From positions 145,283 through 209,282 of the IMG/VR virus record IMGVR_UViG_3300036944_001289: a stretch of 64,000 nucleotides of DNA. The stretch is one strand, 5' to 3'. The translations under genes were made by a program, and so were the position numbers. Within the stretch, counting starts at the first letter, position 1; every line of letters starts with the position of its first letter. Positions 51,678-63,474 of the stretch are shown piece by piece. Under the pieces are notes generated by a model that had not been told where the DNA came from, ran no database searches, and worked only from the letters and a program-made list of their open reading frames with translations.

Positions 51678-52106
51678 TTAGCTGACAAATACGTTCTCGG
51701 GATTAGCTTCAATATACTCCCCGATTTGCTTAAAAGTTAACTCTCGGTCGTTCATATCTGCAAGACTACCAAACTTATCACCTTGAACAGTTGCAGCTTT
51801 CTTAAACTTACCAACACAATTGCGTAATTTAAGTAATGTTCTTGCGCTATTAGGTAATGTATGACCATCAATATCATATTTAATAAAGGGTAATGCACCA
51901 TGTGGCTCCTCTATCGTTTTGGGTAGCTTTAATTCACCTGTTTCGTTAGCAAGTTTGCAAGCTAGACCAAGACAGCAATACACAGCTGTCTTATTTAACC
52001 GATTAACGGTATGTAGTCGGCTCTTACCTTGACGAAAACGTCCAGATTTAAGAGCATCAATCCAGAGACGTTGAAATGGTGTAAAATTATATGGTTGTTT
52101 GTTCAT
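51678..52106 (-). CDS. Hypothetical, tandem paralogue
   Basis: W.DAL.SG.F.QGK..L; YCCLG.AC; ND. Confidence 0.65.
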   Translation of the reverse strand: MNKQPYNFTPFQRLWIDALKSGRFRQGKSRLHTVNRLNKTAVYCCLGLACKLANETGELKLPKTIEEPHGALPFIKYDIDGHTLPNSARTLLKLRNCVGKFKKAATVQGDKFGSLADMNDRELTFKQIGEYIEANPENVFVS

Positions 52107-52489
52107 GTTATATTATTGAAGTAACGTTGAGGATTTTGTCGAATTTTAGCAGCAAGACATTTATGAGATTCACCCATATCGTTCAATACTGCGAGATCAT
52201 CTCCGCGTTTATCTACTAAGTTAAGCGCAGTTTGAACTGATTTTGGTAAATAACTTCTCCCACCATCAAAAGACACAACAGGTTTACCTAATGCAGCTGA
52301 TACTGACATTTTCTTTGAAACCTTTACTCCATTCTCACGTGCAACAACACAAGCAACACCGAGACAACAATAACTAACCGTCTTACGTTTTATATTGCGT
52401 GTTGCAAGGTGATTTTTACCTTGACGAAAACGTCCAGTTTCGAGAGCATTAATCCAAGCTTCTTGTAAAGGTGTAAAATTGTATTTCAT
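52103..52489 (-). CDS. Hypothetical, tandem paralogue
   Basis: Same motifs; promoter 52498-52513. Confidence 0.65.
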   Translation of the reverse strand: MKYNFTPLQEAWINALETGRFRQGKNHLATRNIKRKTVSYCCLGVACVVARENGVKVSKKMSVSAALGKPVVSFDGGRSYLPKSVQTALNLVDKRGDDLAVLNDMGESHKCLAAKIRQNPQRYFNNIT

Positions 52490-52546
52490 ACTTGTATATG
52501 TTATTCTTGTTCCTGATGCTATTCAGGATGTATGTAATTAAAAAAT

Positions 52547-52631
52547 TGGTGCCGCAGGCCGGACTCGAACCGGCACGCCGTTAAGGCAACAGATTTTAAG
52601 TCTGTAGTGTCTACCATTCCACCACTGCGGC
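52547..52631 (-). tRNA. tRNA-Leu(UAA)
   Basis: Type II cloverleaf; ACAGA-CTTAAAA-TCTGT; long variable arm; CCA. Confidence 0.95.
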
Positions 52632-53035
52632 ATTAATCTCTCAGGTGACACTAACTATTAACCCATTACTCTAATTATTAACAAACAACATTATCACCTG
52701 AGAGAAAATTAAAAAAAGAACTAAATGAAGGATATCAACTTTTATAGTGGTTTAGCCTATCTTCAATGAAGTCAGCGTTAGCTCATAGGTTATATCCATT
52801 ACCACCTTGTATCGCTTAGAAAGCGATTAGCATTTTCAATTAACTTATCTTTTATATGACATAATTTTATAGAAGTTCCAAGGTTAAAAGATTTGATAAT
52901 CTCCATGGTAGTTATTCTGCTATAGTTATTTCAGGAGGGTTTCTCTCTACTGCTGCTGTGCTGCTCACAACATTTGGAGCATCCTAAGACTACCTTAATC
53001 ATCCTAGGCCATTCTTACGAATCGATTATCAAAAT

Positions 53036-53145
53036 TAGTGAAGTGTTATAAGACTCGAACTTATATGTTGTGACTAAATCAACCGGCCCGCTAAGTGTAT
53101 ACGTCATATACCACCGCCTATGTTTACCATTTCATCAAACACCTC
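53036..53145 (-). ncRNA. tRNA-like RNA with 8-bp acceptor and extended anticodon arm
   Basis: Leu-type D arm; ATAAG-TTCGAGT-CTTAT T arm; ends ACTA. Confidence 0.65.
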
Positions 53146-53503
53146 AAAAAACTAATCACATAACAATCAGGTAATCTTCTGCCGCTGGTTACCGGTTACC
53201 TCCGATCCGAGACTTATACATGATAGTTTAAATTGCTATGTGAAGATTATATGAAAGAACAAAAAAATAAAGCCCAGATAGGTTTGACCTGCGTTACCTA
53301 TTATTCGTTTCATCAGCAGGTGAGTCATCCACGAATATATCTATCGTTAGAAAGAACTGGATAAATCAATAAAGAACAAAAATGTTTACGGTTACTTTAC
53401 AATGGCTGTTTTTGATGACTAGTCAGCCCAATTTCCACGAATTTCACCGTTGGATAATTCCGGTTAGAGGTCAATCTTTCCTTGTTACCCTAAGCTATTA
53501 AAA

Positions 53504-53582
53504 TGGTAGGCAGAGTGGGATTCTAACCCACGATCCGAGTGTTATGAGCACTCCGCTTTGGAACGGGCTAAGCTATCTGCCT
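53504..53582 (-). tRNA. tRNA-CAU (Ile2 or elongator Met)
   Basis: GAGTG-CTCATAA-CACTC; compensatory U19-A56; CCA. Confidence 0.88.
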
Positions 53583-53949
53583 GAAAGATTTACAAAACTT
53601 ACAAAGAACAAAAATAATTCTCAATATAGGCCGTTCATACAATACTTTTGCTAATGTACTATTGTATACATCGCACCGTGCGTAGTTCAATTATCCGTAG
53701 CATCGGAATTTTGTAACCACTTATATTGAGAAAAGAACAAAATTAGTGCGTTGTACGTAGGAGCTACCAACGCTAATAGCTGTACTTCACCAGCCTACTC
53801 TAGCTTTCATTACCACTCTGCGCTTTCAAAGTATCGGTAACTACTCATTATACATTTCACTTAAGACAATCACCTGCGGGTGTGTTGCAATATATAAGTT
53901 TCTATCAATTACTATCTAGAAATTGTTAACGAACTCTCTTAACACCTAA

Positions 53950-53965
53950 ATTGTATTAAAGTTCC
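53950..53965 (-). promoter_or_regulatory. GGAAC-N5-TACAAT promoter of the RNA array
   Basis: GGAAC TTTAA TACAAT. Confidence 0.65.
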
Positions 53966-53981
53966 TAGGCTATAATTTTTA

Positions 53982-54305
53982 TTAGCTCAATTTAATGCAG
54001 CAATCCAGATCATAGAAACCTTGCTTATCAAAACCTTCTGAAGCCAATACCTGCGTGTTGATAAAGTCAGCAAGGTTACGAGCATCACCTTCCAGTAGTT
54101 TCAATTTATTAGCTACATAATCCCAATGAGCAAAATGGCTAAAGGTATATGCTCCTTTTCCCATGATACCAATAAAGAAAGATCCTTCATTGCGTATAAA
54201 TCCTACTTGAAACATTGTCCCATTGCCTAGTGCAAGGTTAATAAAACCATGCGTTGAATCTAGGTATTTAAACTCCTTACTCTCAAAAGGTCTAATTGTT
54301 TCCAT
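53982..54305 (-). CDS. Hypothetical protein
   Basis: ATG 5 nt below promoter 54311-54326. Confidence 0.6.
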   Translation of the reverse strand: METIRPFESKEFKYLDSTHGFINLALGNGTMFQVGFIRNEGSFFIGIMGKGAYTFSHFAHWDYVANKLKLLEGDARNLADFINTQVLASEGFDKQGFYDLDCCIKLS

Positions 54306-56541: not shown

Positions 56542-57162
56542 ATGTCTCATTTTTATATTTTATATAAGATAGTAAATAAAGTCAATAATAAATTCTATAT
56601 AGGTGTACATAAGACTGTCGATATACACGATAACTATATGGGTTCTGGTCATCTTATAAAGGCTGCTATTGCAAAATATGGTATCGAGAATTTTACAAAA
56701 GAAATAATAAACGTATTTACAAATAGTGTAGATGCGTATAATAAAGAAAGAGAAATTATAACAAAGGAGTTATTAGAGAGCAAGCAGTGTTATAATATAA
56801 AGGAAGGTGGTCGTGGTGGGTTTGAACATATAAGACAGAAAAATCTACATAAGTGGTCTAAAGGTAAGGTAATTATACATAACCCTTTAACTGGGCAGCA
56901 AACTAAAGTATCGACTGATTTATTACAATCTTATTTGGACAAAGGATGGTTAAAGGGATTTAAGCCTGAAGCACTAAAACGGATGTCGGAGTCTGGTAAA
57001 ATTAAAATACAAACAGCAGAACATCGCAGTAAGAACTCTCAAACCAAAAAGGGTTGCAAAAAATTAATACCACCAGAACATAGTATGTATAAACAGAGAT
57101 ATAAATTTATTAAAATTGAGAAGGTAGAAGAATATATAGCTGCAGGTTGGAGACTGTTTTAG
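56542..57162 (+). CDS. GIY-YIG homing endonuclease (Seg-like)
   Basis: LYKI.N.VN.KFYIGVH; YMGSG; KYG.ENF.KE; YN...GG. Confidence 0.88.
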   Translation: MSHFYILYKIVNKVNNKFYIGVHKTVDIHDNYMGSGHLIKAAIAKYGIENFTKEIINVFTNSVDAYNKEREIITKELLESKQCYNIKEGGRGGFEHIRQKNLHKWSKGKVIIHNPLTGQQTKVSTDLLQSYLDKGWLKGFKPEALKRMSESGKIKIQTAEHRSKNSQTKKGCKKLIPPEHSMYKQRYKFIKIEKVEEYIAAGWRLF

Positions 57163-58211: not shown

Positions 58212-58433
58212 TTAAATTACGCCTAGACCTTCAAACTTTAAAATGTTATCGTAGATAAACTTTACTAAACGTTGATGGTCTTTAATATTGTATTGTACTC
58301 TTACCATCATTGCTCTCTTATCTTTATCGGTTATATTACTATTACGGATATGTTCTAGTGTGATACTCTGAGCTTTTTCAAAGTCAGGCTCGTTCTGTAC
58401 TTGTTCAGCGATTGAACGTAAGAATGATTTCAT
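58212..58433 (-). CDS. Hypothetical protein
   Basis: ATG 5 nt below promoter 58439-58454. Confidence 0.55.
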   Translation of the reverse strand: MKSFLRSIAEQVQNEPDFEKAQSITLEHIRNSNITDKDKRAMMVRVQYNIKDHQRLVKFIYDNILKFEGLGVI

Positions 58434-59083
58434 AATAGATTGTATTGTTGTTCCTTATACTTTAACATATATAACCAGCCATCACTAAGCCATTTAAGGT
58501 AATCTTCTGCTTTATAAGTATCACCATACCATCCACAAGAGTAAGGATGATGCGCTTCTATAAGCTCAAGACCATTAAGTGTCATTCCAACATCTAGTGT
58601 ACCATTCCAATCCTTTGGTATTTTAATTGGTATCTTTGGAGCAGGTAGCTCTTCTTTACCTAAATACCACCAAGCGGAGATTACCTTCCCTTTAGAGATG
58701 TAATACCTCCACTCATTTTCAAACTCTACGAATTCAGAGCAAAGATGTGGACCAACCTCTACGCTACCATCAGCCATTCTACCTTGATAGCGCTTATAAC
58801 GATCAGCAGGCTTAACATGTATGCCGTTATTGGGCCATTCGTTCTGTACCCATGTATTACGTTTAACTAAAGACTTCGTAAAGTGAGGAAAGTAGTTAGG
58901 CTCAATTTTAAGATCTAAAATAGATTCGATCCAAAGAGCATTACCAAATGGTGTATAGCCTTCTGGAATGCTCTTTGGATCGCTAACTATTACATAAGGT
59001 ATCTTTTGCATAGAGCATGTAGCTACAATCGATACACCATTACGAGTATCTTTAACATCATGCTCTATTGCAAACCCTTTCAT
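58430..59083 (-). CDS. ATP-grasp protein (DUF4343/R2K-like)
   Basis: VKP....K..G; SE.V.F..EWRY; LDVG...G..LIE. Confidence 0.7.
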   Translation of the reverse strand: MKGFAIEHDVKDTRNGVSIVATCSMQKIPYVIVSDPKSIPEGYTPFGNALWIESILDLKIEPNYFPHFTKSLVKRNTWVQNEWPNNGIHVKPADRYKRYQGRMADGSVEVGPHLCSEFVEFENEWRYYISKGKVISAWWYLGKEELPAPKIPIKIPKDWNGTLDVGMTLNGLELIEAHHPYSCGWYGDTYKAEDYLKWLSDGWLYMLKYKEQQYNLL

Positions 59084-61122: not shown

Positions 61123-61674
61123 TTACTTACACATTAGGTTAAAACCTTCTTCGATCTTACTGACAAGATCATTTATTACATTCTCTGTTAACTCGTCTTT
61201 ATAATGACCATAATAGTCTTTAATCTTTACATAGTGAGCTTTACCAAATGTTTGTAAATAACTTATCTTATCACGTGCGTTAGTAAAACCTGGATGCTGA
61301 TTATCTACAAGAACAGAGTAACAAGGCTCATCAGTAAACTTATGAGATCTTGGTGTTTTCATATATAATGCATGCCATAGATCTCTACCAATAATTTGAT
61401 TCTGAGTAAAACCTAGATTGAATGCATCATTCATCCCTTGACCATACTCTGATGTAGCTGCAGTGAGCATATATACATTTGGATATAATCGCCTCAAAGT
61501 TTTAAGAAACTCGTGCGCATTTGGGCGAAGTCTTACCCCATAGCTTTCAGTTGGTTGCATATCCCAACCTCCGGCATCTAGAGTAAAATCTACACGCACT
61601 CTATCCTTACCGAAGTTATTCCATTCAGCATGGATTAGCGTTTCATCTAAATCTAAAAATAAGAACTTATTCAT
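61123..61674 (-). CDS. HAD-superfamily phosphatase (FCP1/NIF-like)
   Basis: LDLDETLIH; RP....FL; TAA; LVDN. Confidence 0.8.
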   Translation of the reverse strand: MNKFLFLDLDETLIHAEWNNFGKDRVRVDFTLDAGGWDMQPTESYGVRLRPNAHEFLKTLRRLYPNVYMLTAATSEYGQGMNDAFNLGFTQNQIIGRDLWHALYMKTPRSHKFTDEPCYSVLVDNQHPGFTNARDKISYLQTFGKAHYVKIKDYYGHYKDELTENVINDLVSKIEEGFNLMCK

Positions 61675-62463: not shown

Positions 62464-63474
62464 TCATTTATTAGAATCGTAGTATTTGTTAATGACCTTA
62501 AATGATCGAATATCGGGATGATTCTCTACATTGATGACAACACCTTCAAAAGGTGTACCATTGATATCTTTAAGTTCTTCATCATACTTTTGAATTAGCT
62601 CTGGAGAAAGAACTACGTCTTGCTCAAGGAAAGGTACAGTTGGAATACCAAGTTCATTAGCAACATTGAGGAAGTAGAACTGTTCACCTTTACGAGTATA
62701 TCTATGTTCATCAATCAGATAGATTGAGAATATAGCAAGGTCTTTATTCTTAGTTGAGTGAGGATTGAGTTTGAAAGCTTGAATACCTTGACCGTAGGAC
62801 TCTCCACGGATAGCAATAGATACATTATGTTTTAAAGCATATCTGGTTAGCTTCTCAAGTATACTATATTTCTTGTTAAGAAGTGTATAGTTATTAGTAA
62901 TATCATCTTTGAATTCTAGAGTACGACCACAGATACCAGTTTTGATAGACTTATCATGGTCAAACTTAACATAGGCGGTCCAAGACTGCCCATCAATCTT
63001 TAGAGTAACATCAACCTTACTACCATAAGGTACAGAGATGTTCTGGTACCGCTCTTCGTCTGTCTTAGGTATTCCATAAGGAAGGAGACCCTTAGCTGAA
63101 AGATCAGCAGGAACAGGCGGTTCGTATTTGATGACACCAATGTAGGCGGAAATCTCCAGACCCTCGGAAGGAATCACTGGGTAGGTCTGAGCATTATCTC
63201 CAAAGATGTTCTCGATGGGTTCCACAATACCCATGGACCACTCACCGCGAAGCTTTACAGCTTTTACACGAGATGACTTCGACTTATAGAAGGCGGCCCA
63301 CGCAGTGTTGTCAGGTAGAACAGTGTCGGGCTGAATAAAGACAATCAGGTCATCAACCTTGTATTGGTCACGCTTGACAATTGACTTGTAGCCCAGAACG
63401 CCTACAATATCGAGAGCATCGGCATTGGGATGTTTAGTGGCAGTGTGAATCTTTTCAATGGAAGCTAGTTTCAT
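62464..63474 (-). CDS. RNA ligase (DRB0094/Rnl family with N-terminal OB-like domain)
   Basis: HPNADAL; LRG..S.G; PKTDEER.QN; KIDG; GE..G.GIQ; EGVV; FKVI. Confidence 0.88.
   Translation of the reverse strand: MKLASIEKIHTATKHPNADALDIVGVLGYKSIVKRDQYKVDDLIVFIQPDTVLPDNTAWAAFYKSKSSRVKAVKLRGEWSMGIVEPIENIFGDNAQTYPVIPSEGLEISAYIGVIKYEPPVPADLSAKGLLPYGIPKTDEERYQNISVPYGSKVDVTLKIDGQSWTAYVKFDHDKSIKTGICGRTLEFKDDITNNYTLLNKKYSILEKLTRYALKHNVSIAIRGESYGQGIQAFKLNPHSTKNKDLAIFSIYLIDEHRYTRKGEQFYFLNVANELGIPTVPFLEQDVVLSPELIQKYDEELKDINGTPFEGVVINVENHPDIRSFKVINKYYDSNK

What the first reader, a model, noticed from the sequence alone, without database searches (positions are those of the whole stretch)
53036..53145. tRNA mimic with 8/5 acceptor-T fold and a rebuilt anticodon arm
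Minus strand reads GAGGTGTT-TG-ATG-AAATGGTAAA-CAT-A-GGC..GTATA-TGACG-TATAC..GCC-variable arm-ATAAG-TTCGAGT-CTTAT-AACACTTC-ACTA. The D and T arms are Leu-like and intact. The acceptor has 8 bp (as in tRNA-Sec), the anticodon arm is elongated with an internal loop and no 7-nt loop, and the end is CTA rather than CCA. An intact elbow with a re-engineered anticodon arm suggests selection rather than decay. Inference: a decoy for anticodon nucleases, synthetases or TGT, or an intron-bearing tRNA.
Basis: partly seen in the sequence, partly recalled or inferred. Interest (0 to 1): 0.62.

Follow-up and report, generated by a model that had tools for sequence, protein, structure and literature searches.

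The report
Conserved non-decoding tRNA-like RNA in phage
A T4-like phage carries, among its tRNA genes, a 110-base RNA gene that keeps the tRNA body but has a long rod where the anticodon arm should be; a diverged relative keeps the same folds through matched base changes, so it is a working RNA of unknown role and not a dead tRNA.

Summary
On the minus strand at 53145-53036 there is a tRNA-shaped element with an acceptor stem, a Leu-like D arm, a canonical T arm and a long extra arm. It has no anticodon stem-loop, and it ends A-CUA where the three neighbouring tRNAs end A-CCA. ARAGORN and Rfam do not call it.

The window is an uncultured, distant T4-like myophage. In close relatives the element is identical or differs by one base. 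It is missing from the tRNA cluster of one lineage. One contig (L058) holds a strongly diverged copy at a different position in the cluster. Between the two versions every helix is kept, including the hairpin inside the rebuilt arm. 15-16 of 29-32 pairs changed on both sides, while the loops stay conserved. This shows selection on an RNA structure and not decay.

No excision gives a normal tRNA in both lineages, so the intron idea fails. The 8/5 stack is specific to the window lineage.

The closest known thing is T4 RNA C, a tRNA-like stable RNA of unknown function in the T4 tRNA cluster. It has the same general layout, but a model built from RNA C does not match the element.

The most likely role is a non-decoding tRNA-body mimic, processed like a tRNA, that binds some tRNA-recognising factor. 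The partner is unknown.

The parts
53036..53145 (-). whole tRNA-like RNA gene (110 nt, numbered 1-110 from 53145 downwards)
   Evidence: Sequence. Model R1 scores it 142.7 bits against itself and finds the L058 homologue at 65.3 bits. The structure is kept by covariation.
53138..53145 (-). acceptor stem, 5' strand (nt 1-8); nt 1 (G) makes the eighth pair, which is specific to the window lineage
   Evidence: Pairs with 53040-53047. Four of the 8 pairs changed on both sides in L058. Pair 1-106 is absent in L058.
53120..53135 (-). D arm: 3-bp stem AUG/CAU and loop AAAUGGUAAA containing G18 G19
   Evidence: All 3 stem pairs changed on both sides in L058. UGGUA in the loop is invariant.
53085..53118 (-). 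central rod that replaces the anticodon arm. From the base it has GGC/GCC, two further pairs, a 3-nt UUR bulge, then a 6-7 bp hairpin with a 5-nt loop UGACG. There is no 7-nt loop.
   Evidence: RNAalifold and pair counts: hairpin pairs at columns 34-39 with 46-52 have 5 changes on both sides. The single substitution in L053 (window 53113, U to C) turns a U.G pair into C-G.
53097..53111 (-). apical hairpin of the rod (GUAUA-UGACG-UAUAC in the window, ACACG-ACGACG-CGUGU in L058); GACG in the loop is conserved
53065..53084 (-). extra (variable-position) arm. The 13-nt core UGAUUUAGUCACA (53081-53069) is identical in both lineages.
   Evidence: Pair 64-78 is U-A in the window and C-G in L058. The core motif occurs only once in the window.
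53048..53064 (-). T arm: 5-bp stem and T loop UUCGAGU (the same loop as the phage tRNA-Leu)
   Evidence: Three of the 5 pairs changed on both sides. G53-C61 and UUCGA are invariant.
53040..53047 (-). acceptor stem, 3' strand (nt 99-106)
53036..53039 (-). 3' tail A-CUA, where sibling tRNAs have A-CCA; the same tail is present in L058
53151..53156 (-). leader ATTAGT, complementary to the trailer ACTAAT (53039-53034); it extends the acceptor helix in the precursor
   Evidence: Fold of 52990-53200. Conserved in L040 and L053, imperfect in L058.
53504..53582 (-). tRNA-Met(CAU), upstream neighbour in the same cluster
52547..52631 (-). tRNA-Leu(UAA), downstream neighbour
53371..53380 (-). one of four exact copies of TTTGTTCTTT. 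The others are at 53254-53263, 53603-53612 and 53732-53741. They sit at the borders of the modules that differ between relatives.
   Evidence: Junctions seen in L043, L053, L058 and L037.

Best explanation
The element is a real gene for a small structured RNA that descends from a class II (Leu-type) tRNA but no longer decodes.

**What is shown**
- It keeps the parts of a tRNA that are read by enzymes acting on the tRNA body: an acceptor helix stacked on a T arm, a D loop with GG, and a T loop UUCGA that together can form the elbow.
- The anticodon arm is replaced by a rod of about 11 bp with a UUR bulge and a GACG-containing end loop.
- The variable-position arm carries an invariant 13-nt core.
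- These features are maintained by selection across two diverged lineages.
- The gene behaves as a movable cassette inside the phage tRNA cluster.

**What is inferred**
- It is transcribed with the tRNAs and cut out by RNase P and the 3' processing enzymes, as T4 RNA C is.
- It accumulates as a stable RNA.
- It works as a tRNA-body mimic. The tRNA-like half engages a host or phage factor that recognises the acceptor, T arm or elbow. The rod and the conserved extra arm provide a second, specific surface.
- It would therefore act as a sponge, decoy or tether and not as an adaptor on the ribosome.
- The conserved CUA in place of CCA suggests that it is not meant to be charged, or is charged only after end repair.
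For: - **Cluster context:** the element lies in a same-strand cluster Met / element / Leu / Arg in a T4-like phage (gp23, gp20).
- **Close relatives:** it is identical in L040, where the adjacent spacer has 15 differences in 404 nt and tRNA-Met is only 87% identical (Fisher p=0.03).
- **Single substitution:** the L053, L060 and L061 copies carry one substitution, and it improves a pair.
- **Diverged homologue:** L058 scores 65 bits, E 3e-14.
- **Covariation:** 29/29 pairs are kept, 15 with changes on both sides. Slid controls give 26-55% paired and 0-2 double changes. RNAalifold independently gives 32 pairs, 16 of them compensatory.
- **Loops against stems:** paired columns are 42% identical and unpaired columns 71% identical (p=0.004).
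- **Tail:** the ACUA tail is shared by both lineages, while all true tRNAs end ACCA.
- **Precedent:** T4 RNA C has the same general layout and sits in the tRNA cluster.
Against: - Only two independent lineages are available (three distinct sequences). The alignment used for the pair counts was fitted to the model.
- There are no expression data.
- The fold energy of the window copy is not better than that of shuffled sequence.
- The element is absent from the cluster of a close lineage (L043-L052, L056), so it is dispensable.
- No binding partner, target complementarity or linked tRNA-handling gene was found. The only candidates are an RNA ligase and a phosphatase about 8-10 kb away.
- The D arm and the length of the stack differ between the lineages, so the tRNA-likeness that matters is not yet defined.
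Confidence: 0.7

Rival explanations
1. The element is a decaying tRNA-Leu pseudogene. A small hairpin was inserted into the anticodon arm, and the rest still looks intact only because the event is recent.
For: - Neither tRNA finder calls it.
- It lacks CCA.
- It is absent from a close lineage.
- The fold z-score is about 0.
- The tRNA cluster is full of indels and holds at least one tRNA-like fragment (53198-53217).
Against: - A homologue with only 42% identity in the paired columns keeps every helix, including the inserted hairpin, by changes on both sides.
- Loops are more conserved than stems.
- The abnormal arm and the CUA tail are shared by both lineages, so they are old and have been retained.
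Confidence: 0.05
2. The element is an intron-bearing or otherwise edited tRNA. A segment of the central region is removed, for example with help from the phage RNA ligase, to give a decoding tRNA.
For: - ARAGORN with introns allowed and the threshold lowered to 80% proposes Ala(agc) with an 18-nt intron.
- A relative carries a true group I intron in tRNA-Leu(UAA).
- An RNA ligase gene lies at 62464-63474.
Against: - In an exhaustive excision scan (8-55 nt, all positions) the one anticodon common to both lineages (tta) came from unrelated excisions, and the L058 calls did not use the real acceptor stem, so no consistent excision was found.
- The candidate anticodon positions are not conserved.
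- 34 nt cannot hold a group I core, and no intron family matches.
- The hairpin that would be removed is itself under structural selection.
Confidence: 0.05
3. The element is an unusual decoding tRNA whose anticodon sits in the conserved extra arm. The loop A-U-UUA-G-U would be read as anticodon UUA, an ochre suppressor, and the central rod would be an additional arm.
For: - The 13-nt core with U33-like and purine-37-like neighbours is invariant between the lineages.
- Non-canonical cloverleaves exist in phages (PMC5389517).
Against: - TAA is the main stop codon (52 of 76 long ORFs), and coding is dense under the standard code.
- The arm would sit on the wrong side of the core and would leave a 2-nt variable region.
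- Its stem has a 2-nt bulge.
- The tail is CUA.
Confidence: 0.03
4. The element is a cis-acting signal and not a trans-acting RNA. It would be a tRNA-shaped punctuation mark that directs RNase P or 3' processing of the polycistronic tRNA transcript, or a DNA- or RNA-level element that helps the cassette move.
For: - Leader and trailer pair beyond the acceptor.
- Cassette behaviour: the position differs in L058, the element is absent in L043-type contigs, and TTTGTTCTTT repeats lie at the borders.
- Homing endonuclease genes are nearby in the window and in relatives.
Against: - An RNase P site needs only the acceptor/T minihelix. Selection on the rod, on its loop and on the 13-nt core of the extra arm is not explained.
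- Covariation shows RNA-level constraint and not DNA-level constraint.
Confidence: 0.15

Closest known systems
Bacteriophage T4 RNA C (species 1 RNA, rnaC)
   Same: - It is encoded on the tRNA strand inside the tRNA cluster of a T4-type phage. In phage EcS1 it lies between tRNA-Phe and tRNA-Trp.
- The layout is the same: acceptor-like stem, long irregular rod, extra arm, canonical T arm GGUUCGAAUCC, no anticodon loop and a non-CCA tail. The layout is supported by covariation.
- Its function is unknown (PMC3014915, PMC9697503).
   Different: - RNA C has no D arm, is 139 nt long and has an interrupted acceptor.
- There is no detectable homology. The RNA C covariance model scores the element 4.2 bits with filters off, and the element's model does not find rnaC.
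Class II tRNA-Leu of the same phage lineage
   Same: - The D loop is AAAUGGUAAA, against AAAUGGUAGA or GAAUGGUAGA in the Leu tRNAs.
- The T loop UUCGAGU is identical.
- Both have a long extra arm, A before the tail and an AUUUU trailer.
- This is the likely ancestor.
   Different: - The element has no anticodon stem-loop.
- It has a 13-bp stack in place of 12 bp, and CUA in place of CCA.
- All stems differ in sequence.
- The tRNA models do not call it.
tRNA-Sec
   Same: - A 13-bp acceptor/T branch (8/5) is otherwise known only from tRNA-Sec (PMC5389517).
- Both have a long extra arm.
   Different: - The window copy has no 6-bp D stem with a 4-nt loop.
- There is no UCA anticodon and no match to Rfam RF01852.
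- The 13-bp branch is not kept in L058.
Bacterial YrlA / Y RNAs and tmRNA (tRNA-body mimics)
   Same: They follow the same principle. The acceptor, T and D modules are kept so that tRNA enzymes recognise the RNA, and the anticodon arm is replaced by a functional extension. YrlA is cut by RNase P and receives CCA (PMC4201824).
   Different: - In YrlA the RNA ends lie in the Ro-binding stem and not at the acceptor.
- tmRNA has a tag reading frame and G3.U70. Here G.U is present only in the window lineage and there is no reading frame.
- There are no Rfam or ARAGORN matches.

Membership tests
canonical tRNA | acceptor helix stacked on a 5-bp T stem with a T loop UUCRANY | tested here: met
   The stack is 13 bp in the window lineage and 12 bp in L058.
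canonical tRNA | D arm with G18 G19 able to form the elbow | tested here: met
   UGGUA is invariant in the D loop. Formation of the tertiary contact itself cannot be tested with these tools.
canonical tRNA | 5-bp anticodon stem with a 7-nt loop, U33 and a conserved anticodon | tested here: not met
   The central arm is a 34-nt rod with a 5-6 nt end loop. No anticodon is shared between the lineages.
canonical tRNA | reaches the threshold of tRNA gene finders or models | tested here: not met
   ARAGORN at default settings gives no call. Rfam RF00005 gives no match even at E<=10.
canonical tRNA | 3' CCA, which is encoded in all sibling tRNAs of this phage | tested here: not met
   The tail is ACUA in the window and in L058. 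Met, Leu and Arg end ACCA.
intron-bearing tRNA | removal of one segment gives a canonical cloverleaf with the same anticodon in homologues | tested here: not met
   Excision scan. Only a sub-threshold ARAGORN call was obtained.
tRNA-Sec | 8/5 or 9/4 branch, 6-bp D stem with a 4-nt loop, UCA anticodon | tested here: not met
   Only the 8/5 branch is present, and only in the window lineage. There is no RF01852 match.
T4 RNA C family | location in the tRNA cluster of a T4-type phage, same strand as the tRNAs | tested here: met
T4 RNA C family | layout of acceptor, long rod, extra arm and T arm, without an anticodon loop or CCA | tested here: met
   Searches compared. The element has a D arm in addition.
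T4 RNA C family | match to a sequence-plus-structure model of RNA C | tested here: not met
   Model R2 gives no match with default filters and 4.2 bits with filters off.
T4 RNA C family | accumulates as a stable processed RNA late in infection | not testable with these tools
   Needs RNA data from an uncultured phage.
tmRNA | tRNA-like domain with G3.U70 plus a tag reading frame | tested here: not met
   ARAGORN at default settings finds no tmRNA. The G.U pair at position 3 is A-U in L058. There is no reading frame in the 34-nt rod.
YrlA / Y RNA | Ro-binding stem formed by the RNA ends, with the tRNA-like module internal | tested here: not met
   The ends are at the acceptor, and there is no Rfam match.
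tRNA pseudogene | substitutions fall without regard to pairing, so helices erode | tested here: not met
   99-100% of cells are paired, 15-16 pairs are compensatory, and stems vary more than loops.

The most novel reading that the evidence does not exclude
The element is the first recognisable member of a class of phage-encoded, non-chargeable tRNA-body mimics. Such RNAs would titrate or redirect a host factor that reads the acceptor, T arm or elbow of tRNAs. That factor could be a tRNA-directed immune nuclease or toxin, or a processing or CCA enzyme. This would also give a testable model for the long-unexplained T4 RNA C.
Probability: 0.25. Interest if true: 0.8.

Novelty: new variant of a known kind. 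Interest (0 to 1): 0.58.

Why it matters
Phage tRNA clusters are usually read only as codon-supply or anti-defence tRNA sets. T4 RNA C and RNA D have sat in such a cluster for about fifty years without a known function.

This element is an unrelated sequence with the same design in a very distant T4-like phage. It has a tRNA body, no anticodon and no CCA, and it is kept by compensatory evolution.

That suggests the design itself is selected repeatedly. It offers a small, well-defined RNA whose processing, charging, binding partners and effect on tRNA-targeting defences can be tested.

It also shows that tRNA finders miss this class. A crude pattern search turned up further uncalled tRNA-shaped elements in other phage contigs.

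Tried and rejected
**Looking for homologues**
- Megablast and blastn against 50,697 phage records found no homologue of the element. Only the true tRNA-Leu matched.
- IMG/VR pattern scans found only the window's own phage (L005, L019) or chance hits in coding DNA.
- A genome-contig scan for the conserved core gave no match.
- Relatives fetched through a tRNA-Met anchor (L026-L036) were too distant and held no homologue.
- The neighbouring-protein route in IMG/VR gave one locus that was not syntenic (L025).

**Ideas tested and dropped**
- An AlaRS-type G3.U70 identity: the G.U pair is A-U in L058.
- Descent from the group I intron: the element shares only the 8-mer GGUAUAUG with the L037 intron, which I judge a chance match (about 0.09 such 8-mers expected by my own arithmetic).
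- Antisense targets of the 13-nt core in the window: none beyond chance.
- An ochre-suppressor reading: TAA is the main stop codon.
- Lowered-threshold ARAGORN tmRNA calls in the region: spurious.
- Small ORFs across the element: none credible.
- tRNA-handling genes within about 10 kb: only an RNA ligase, a NIF-type phosphatase and an R2K ATP-grasp protein, none specifically linked to the element.

Full report
**Context**

The window has about 33% G+C. It encodes a T4-type portal protein, a gp23 capsid protein, a baseplate protein and ribonucleotide reductase. The capsid protein is only about 34% identical to the nearest cultured phages, which are cyanomyophages. The window is therefore part of an uncultured, distant T4-like myophage. 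Identical DNA lies on IMG/VR contigs of 209 kb and 98 kb.

On the minus strand there is a gene-free stretch of 1.5 kb (52490-53982). It holds tRNA-Met(CAU) at 53582-53504 and tRNA-Leu(UAA) at 52631-52547. tRNA-Arg(UCU) follows at 50501-50426. The element under study lies between Met and Leu.

**The observation**

Numbering runs from 53145 (nt 1) down to 53036 (nt 110).

| Part | Nucleotides | Description |
|---|---|---|
| Acceptor stem | 1-8 with 99-106 | 8 pairs |
| Linker | 9-10 | U9 G10 |
| D arm | 11-26 | 3-bp stem, 10-nt loop AAAUGGUAAA |
| Central arm | 28-61 | 34 nt, irregular |
| Extra arm | 62-81 | 20 nt |
| T arm | 82-98 | 5-bp stem, loop UUCGAGU |
| Tail | 107-110 | ACUA |

RNAfold keeps the acceptor and T arms, although the energy is no better than for shuffled sequence. 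ARAGORN and the Rfam tRNA model do not report the element, even at E<=10.

The three real tRNAs of the window all end A-CCA followed by a T-rich trailer. The element ends A-CUA-AUUUU. The T loop is the same as that of the phage tRNA-Leu, and the D loop differs from the Leu D loops by one or two bases. Descent from a class II Leu-type tRNA is therefore the simplest origin.

**Relatives**

Cultured phages have nothing similar. Relatives were reached through the neighbouring small proteins.

- **Identical copy.** One contig (L040) carries an identical element. Its adjacent spacer shows 15 differences in 404 nt, its tRNA-Met is 87% identical, and its tRNA-Leu is heavily different.
- **One substitution.** Three contigs (L053, L060, L061) carry one substitution, U33 to C.
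- **Element absent.** Eleven contigs of a lineage whose flanking protein is 85% identical (L043-L052, L056) lack the element. Homology resumes two bases after its 3' end.
- **Diverged copy.** One contig (L058) has a strongly diverged copy of the same length that lies upstream of tRNA-Met instead of downstream.

The element is thus a cassette that can be present, absent or moved. No relative has an ordinary tRNA at this place.

**Selection**

A covariance model built from the window and L053 copies finds the L058 copy at 65.3 bits (E 3e-14). Real Leu tRNAs score 32-41 bits.

On the resulting alignment all 29 modelled pairs are kept in all sequences, and 15 pairs changed on both sides:
- 4 of 8 pairs in the acceptor stem
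- 3 of 3 pairs in the D stem
- 4 of 5 pairs in the hairpin inside the rebuilt arm
- 1 pair in the extra arm
- 3 of 5 pairs in the T stem

Sliding the partner columns by 1-3 positions gives 26-55% pairing and 0-2 double changes.

RNAalifold, which predicts its own structure, returns the same cloverleaf. It lengthens the central arm to a rod of about 11 pairs with a conserved three-base UUR bulge. In that model the one substitution seen in L053 turns a U.G pair into C-G.

Between the window and L058, paired columns are 42% identical and unpaired columns 71% identical (p=0.004). The conserved single-stranded blocks are:
- UGGUA in the D loop
- GGCG and GCGGGCC at the base of the rod
- GACG in its end loop
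- a 13-nt core UGAUUUAGUCACA in the extra arm
- the T loop
- the ACUA tail

This is the pattern of a functional RNA. There are caveats. Only two independent lineages are available, and the alignment was fitted to the model.

**What differs between the lineages**

The eighth acceptor pair (G1-C106) exists only in the window lineage. L058 has a 12-bp branch. The D arm of L058 is a 5-7 bp stem with a small GG loop and is not Leu-like. The G.U pair at the third position of the acceptor is A-U in L058. The Sec-like 8/5 fold, any Ala-type identity and the Leu-like D arm are therefore not family features.

**Readings tested and rejected**

- **Intron.** Only a lowered-threshold ARAGORN run proposes Ala(agc) plus an 18-nt intron. 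Removing every possible segment of 8-55 nt from both versions and rerunning ARAGORN gives no homologous excision with a shared anticodon.
- **Suppressor.** The invariant extra-arm loop could be read as an anticodon loop with UUA. However, TAA is the main stop codon (52 of 76 long ORFs), coding is dense under the standard code, and the arm is in the wrong place.
- **Antisense.** The core has no target in the window beyond chance.
- **Known RNA families.** Nothing in Rfam matches the window copy or the L058 copy.

**Closest known**

T4 RNA C (species 1 RNA) lies in the T4 tRNA cluster next to RNA D and tRNA-Arg. It is present in 748 phage records, and its role is unknown (PMC3014915, PMC9697503).

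Folding four diverged copies gives an acceptor-like stem, a long rod, an extra arm and a canonical T arm. There is no anticodon loop and no CCA, and 11 pairs are compensatory. That is the same design as the element, apart from the missing D arm.

A covariance model of RNA C scores the element only 4.2 bits. The element is therefore an analogue and not a member of that family.

Other tRNA-body mimics use the same principle with other topologies: YrlA, which is cut by RNase P and receives CCA (PMC4201824), and tmRNA. A 13-bp acceptor branch is otherwise known only from tRNA-Sec (PMC5389517).

**How it most likely works**

Shown:
- It is a conserved tRNA-derived structure without an anticodon arm or CCA.
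- It behaves as a cassette in the tRNA cluster.

Inferred from what is known of tRNA processing and of RNA C and YrlA:
- It is co-transcribed with the tRNAs and released by RNase P and 3' trimming.
- It is stable because of the tRNA fold.
- It acts through binding of a factor that reads the acceptor/T/elbow half. The rod and the extra arm give specificity.

Whether it sequesters a defence nuclease or toxin, a processing enzyme or a synthetase cannot be decided here. A decoy for anticodon nucleases or TGT is unlikely, because the element has no anticodon loop. I put 0.7 on a selected, non-decoding tRNA-like RNA acting in trans, and about 0.25 on the decoy or sponge version specifically.

**Verdict**

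The intron and Sec-like readings are not supported. The element is a new variant of a known but unexplained kind, the tRNA-like small RNAs of T4-type tRNA clusters. It is of moderate to good interest.

Noticed in passing
L037:330-553 (relative, JGI 3300077523); compare window 52547-52631: A close relative carries an insertion of about 223 nt in tRNA-Leu(UAA) between U34 and A35, the classic site of the Leu group I intron. Rfam Intron_gpI scores it 34.6 bits, E 2e-7, below the gathering threshold. The tRNA-Leu of the window has no intron.
   Followed up: partly
window 53254-53263, 53371-53380, 53603-53612, 53732-53741 (minus strand); near-copy at 52715-52724: TTTGTTCTTT occurs exactly four times in the window, all inside the tRNA cluster. 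The copies sit where relatives differ by whole modules: a 215-nt insert in the window, a 180-nt insert in L037, an HNH gene in L040 and L058, and the element itself. They look like recombination or regulatory junctions for cassette shuffling.
   Followed up: partly
window 53008-52983 (minus strand) and the spacer 53034-52892: The spacer downstream of the element is conserved even in the lineage that lacks the element (about 90% identity). It holds a hairpin CCUAGGA...UCUUAGG that becomes CCUAGAAC...GUUCUAGG in L043, which is a compensatory change. This may be a second structured RNA. No ORF and no Rfam match were found.
   Followed up: partly
window 53198-53217 against 53526-53545: A 20-nt stretch in the window-specific insert upstream of the element is 80% identical to the anticodon-to-T-stem part of tRNA-Met. 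It may be a relic of a tRNA.
   Followed up: no
window 62464-63474 (-), 61123-61674 (-), 58430-59083 (-), 56542-57162 (+): Four genes lie within about 10 kb of the tRNA cluster: an RNA ligase (PHA02142 OB plus RNA_ligase domains), a NIF/HAD-type phosphatase, an R2K ATP-grasp protein and a GIY-YIG-type homing endonuclease. The ligase and the phosphatase could form an RNA repair pair.
   Followed up: no
L040:922-1455, L041:995-1528, L058:702-1235: Relatives carry an HNH_2 endonuclease gene on the opposite strand directly after tRNA-Met. The window has none there.
   Followed up: no
L001:11258-11379; L002:696-802; L003:3396-3502; L004:5088-5211; L009:1238-1344; L016, L018, L020: Unrelated IMG/VR phage contigs hold other tRNA-shaped elements with a Leu-like D arm, a canonical T arm and a non-standard middle, and ARAGORN does not call them. 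Several lie inside large tRNA arrays. L001 also has an 8-bp acceptor and a CCUA tail, and L002 has an ACUA tail. They were picked out by my own search pattern, so their frequency is unknown.
   Followed up: partly
L036:3589-3683 (-), L034:380-474 (+): Distant relatives encode a 95-nt class II-shaped tRNA with anticodon UAU and an encoded CCA. It recalls the allo-tRNA(UAU) species described in PMC5389517.
   Followed up: no
L026:2223-2321 (-): In a 235-kb relative, a 99-nt Leu(UAG)-like tRNA follows tRNA-Met by 18 nt. Its anticodon stem is mispaired or its loop has 12 nt. The element's model does not match it.
   Followed up: partly
window 51678-52106 and 52103-52489 (-): Two tandem paralogues of DUF8296 (phrog_18067) follow tRNA-Leu. 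Relatives have one or two copies, and in L040 a single copy spans what are two genes in the window.
   Followed up: no
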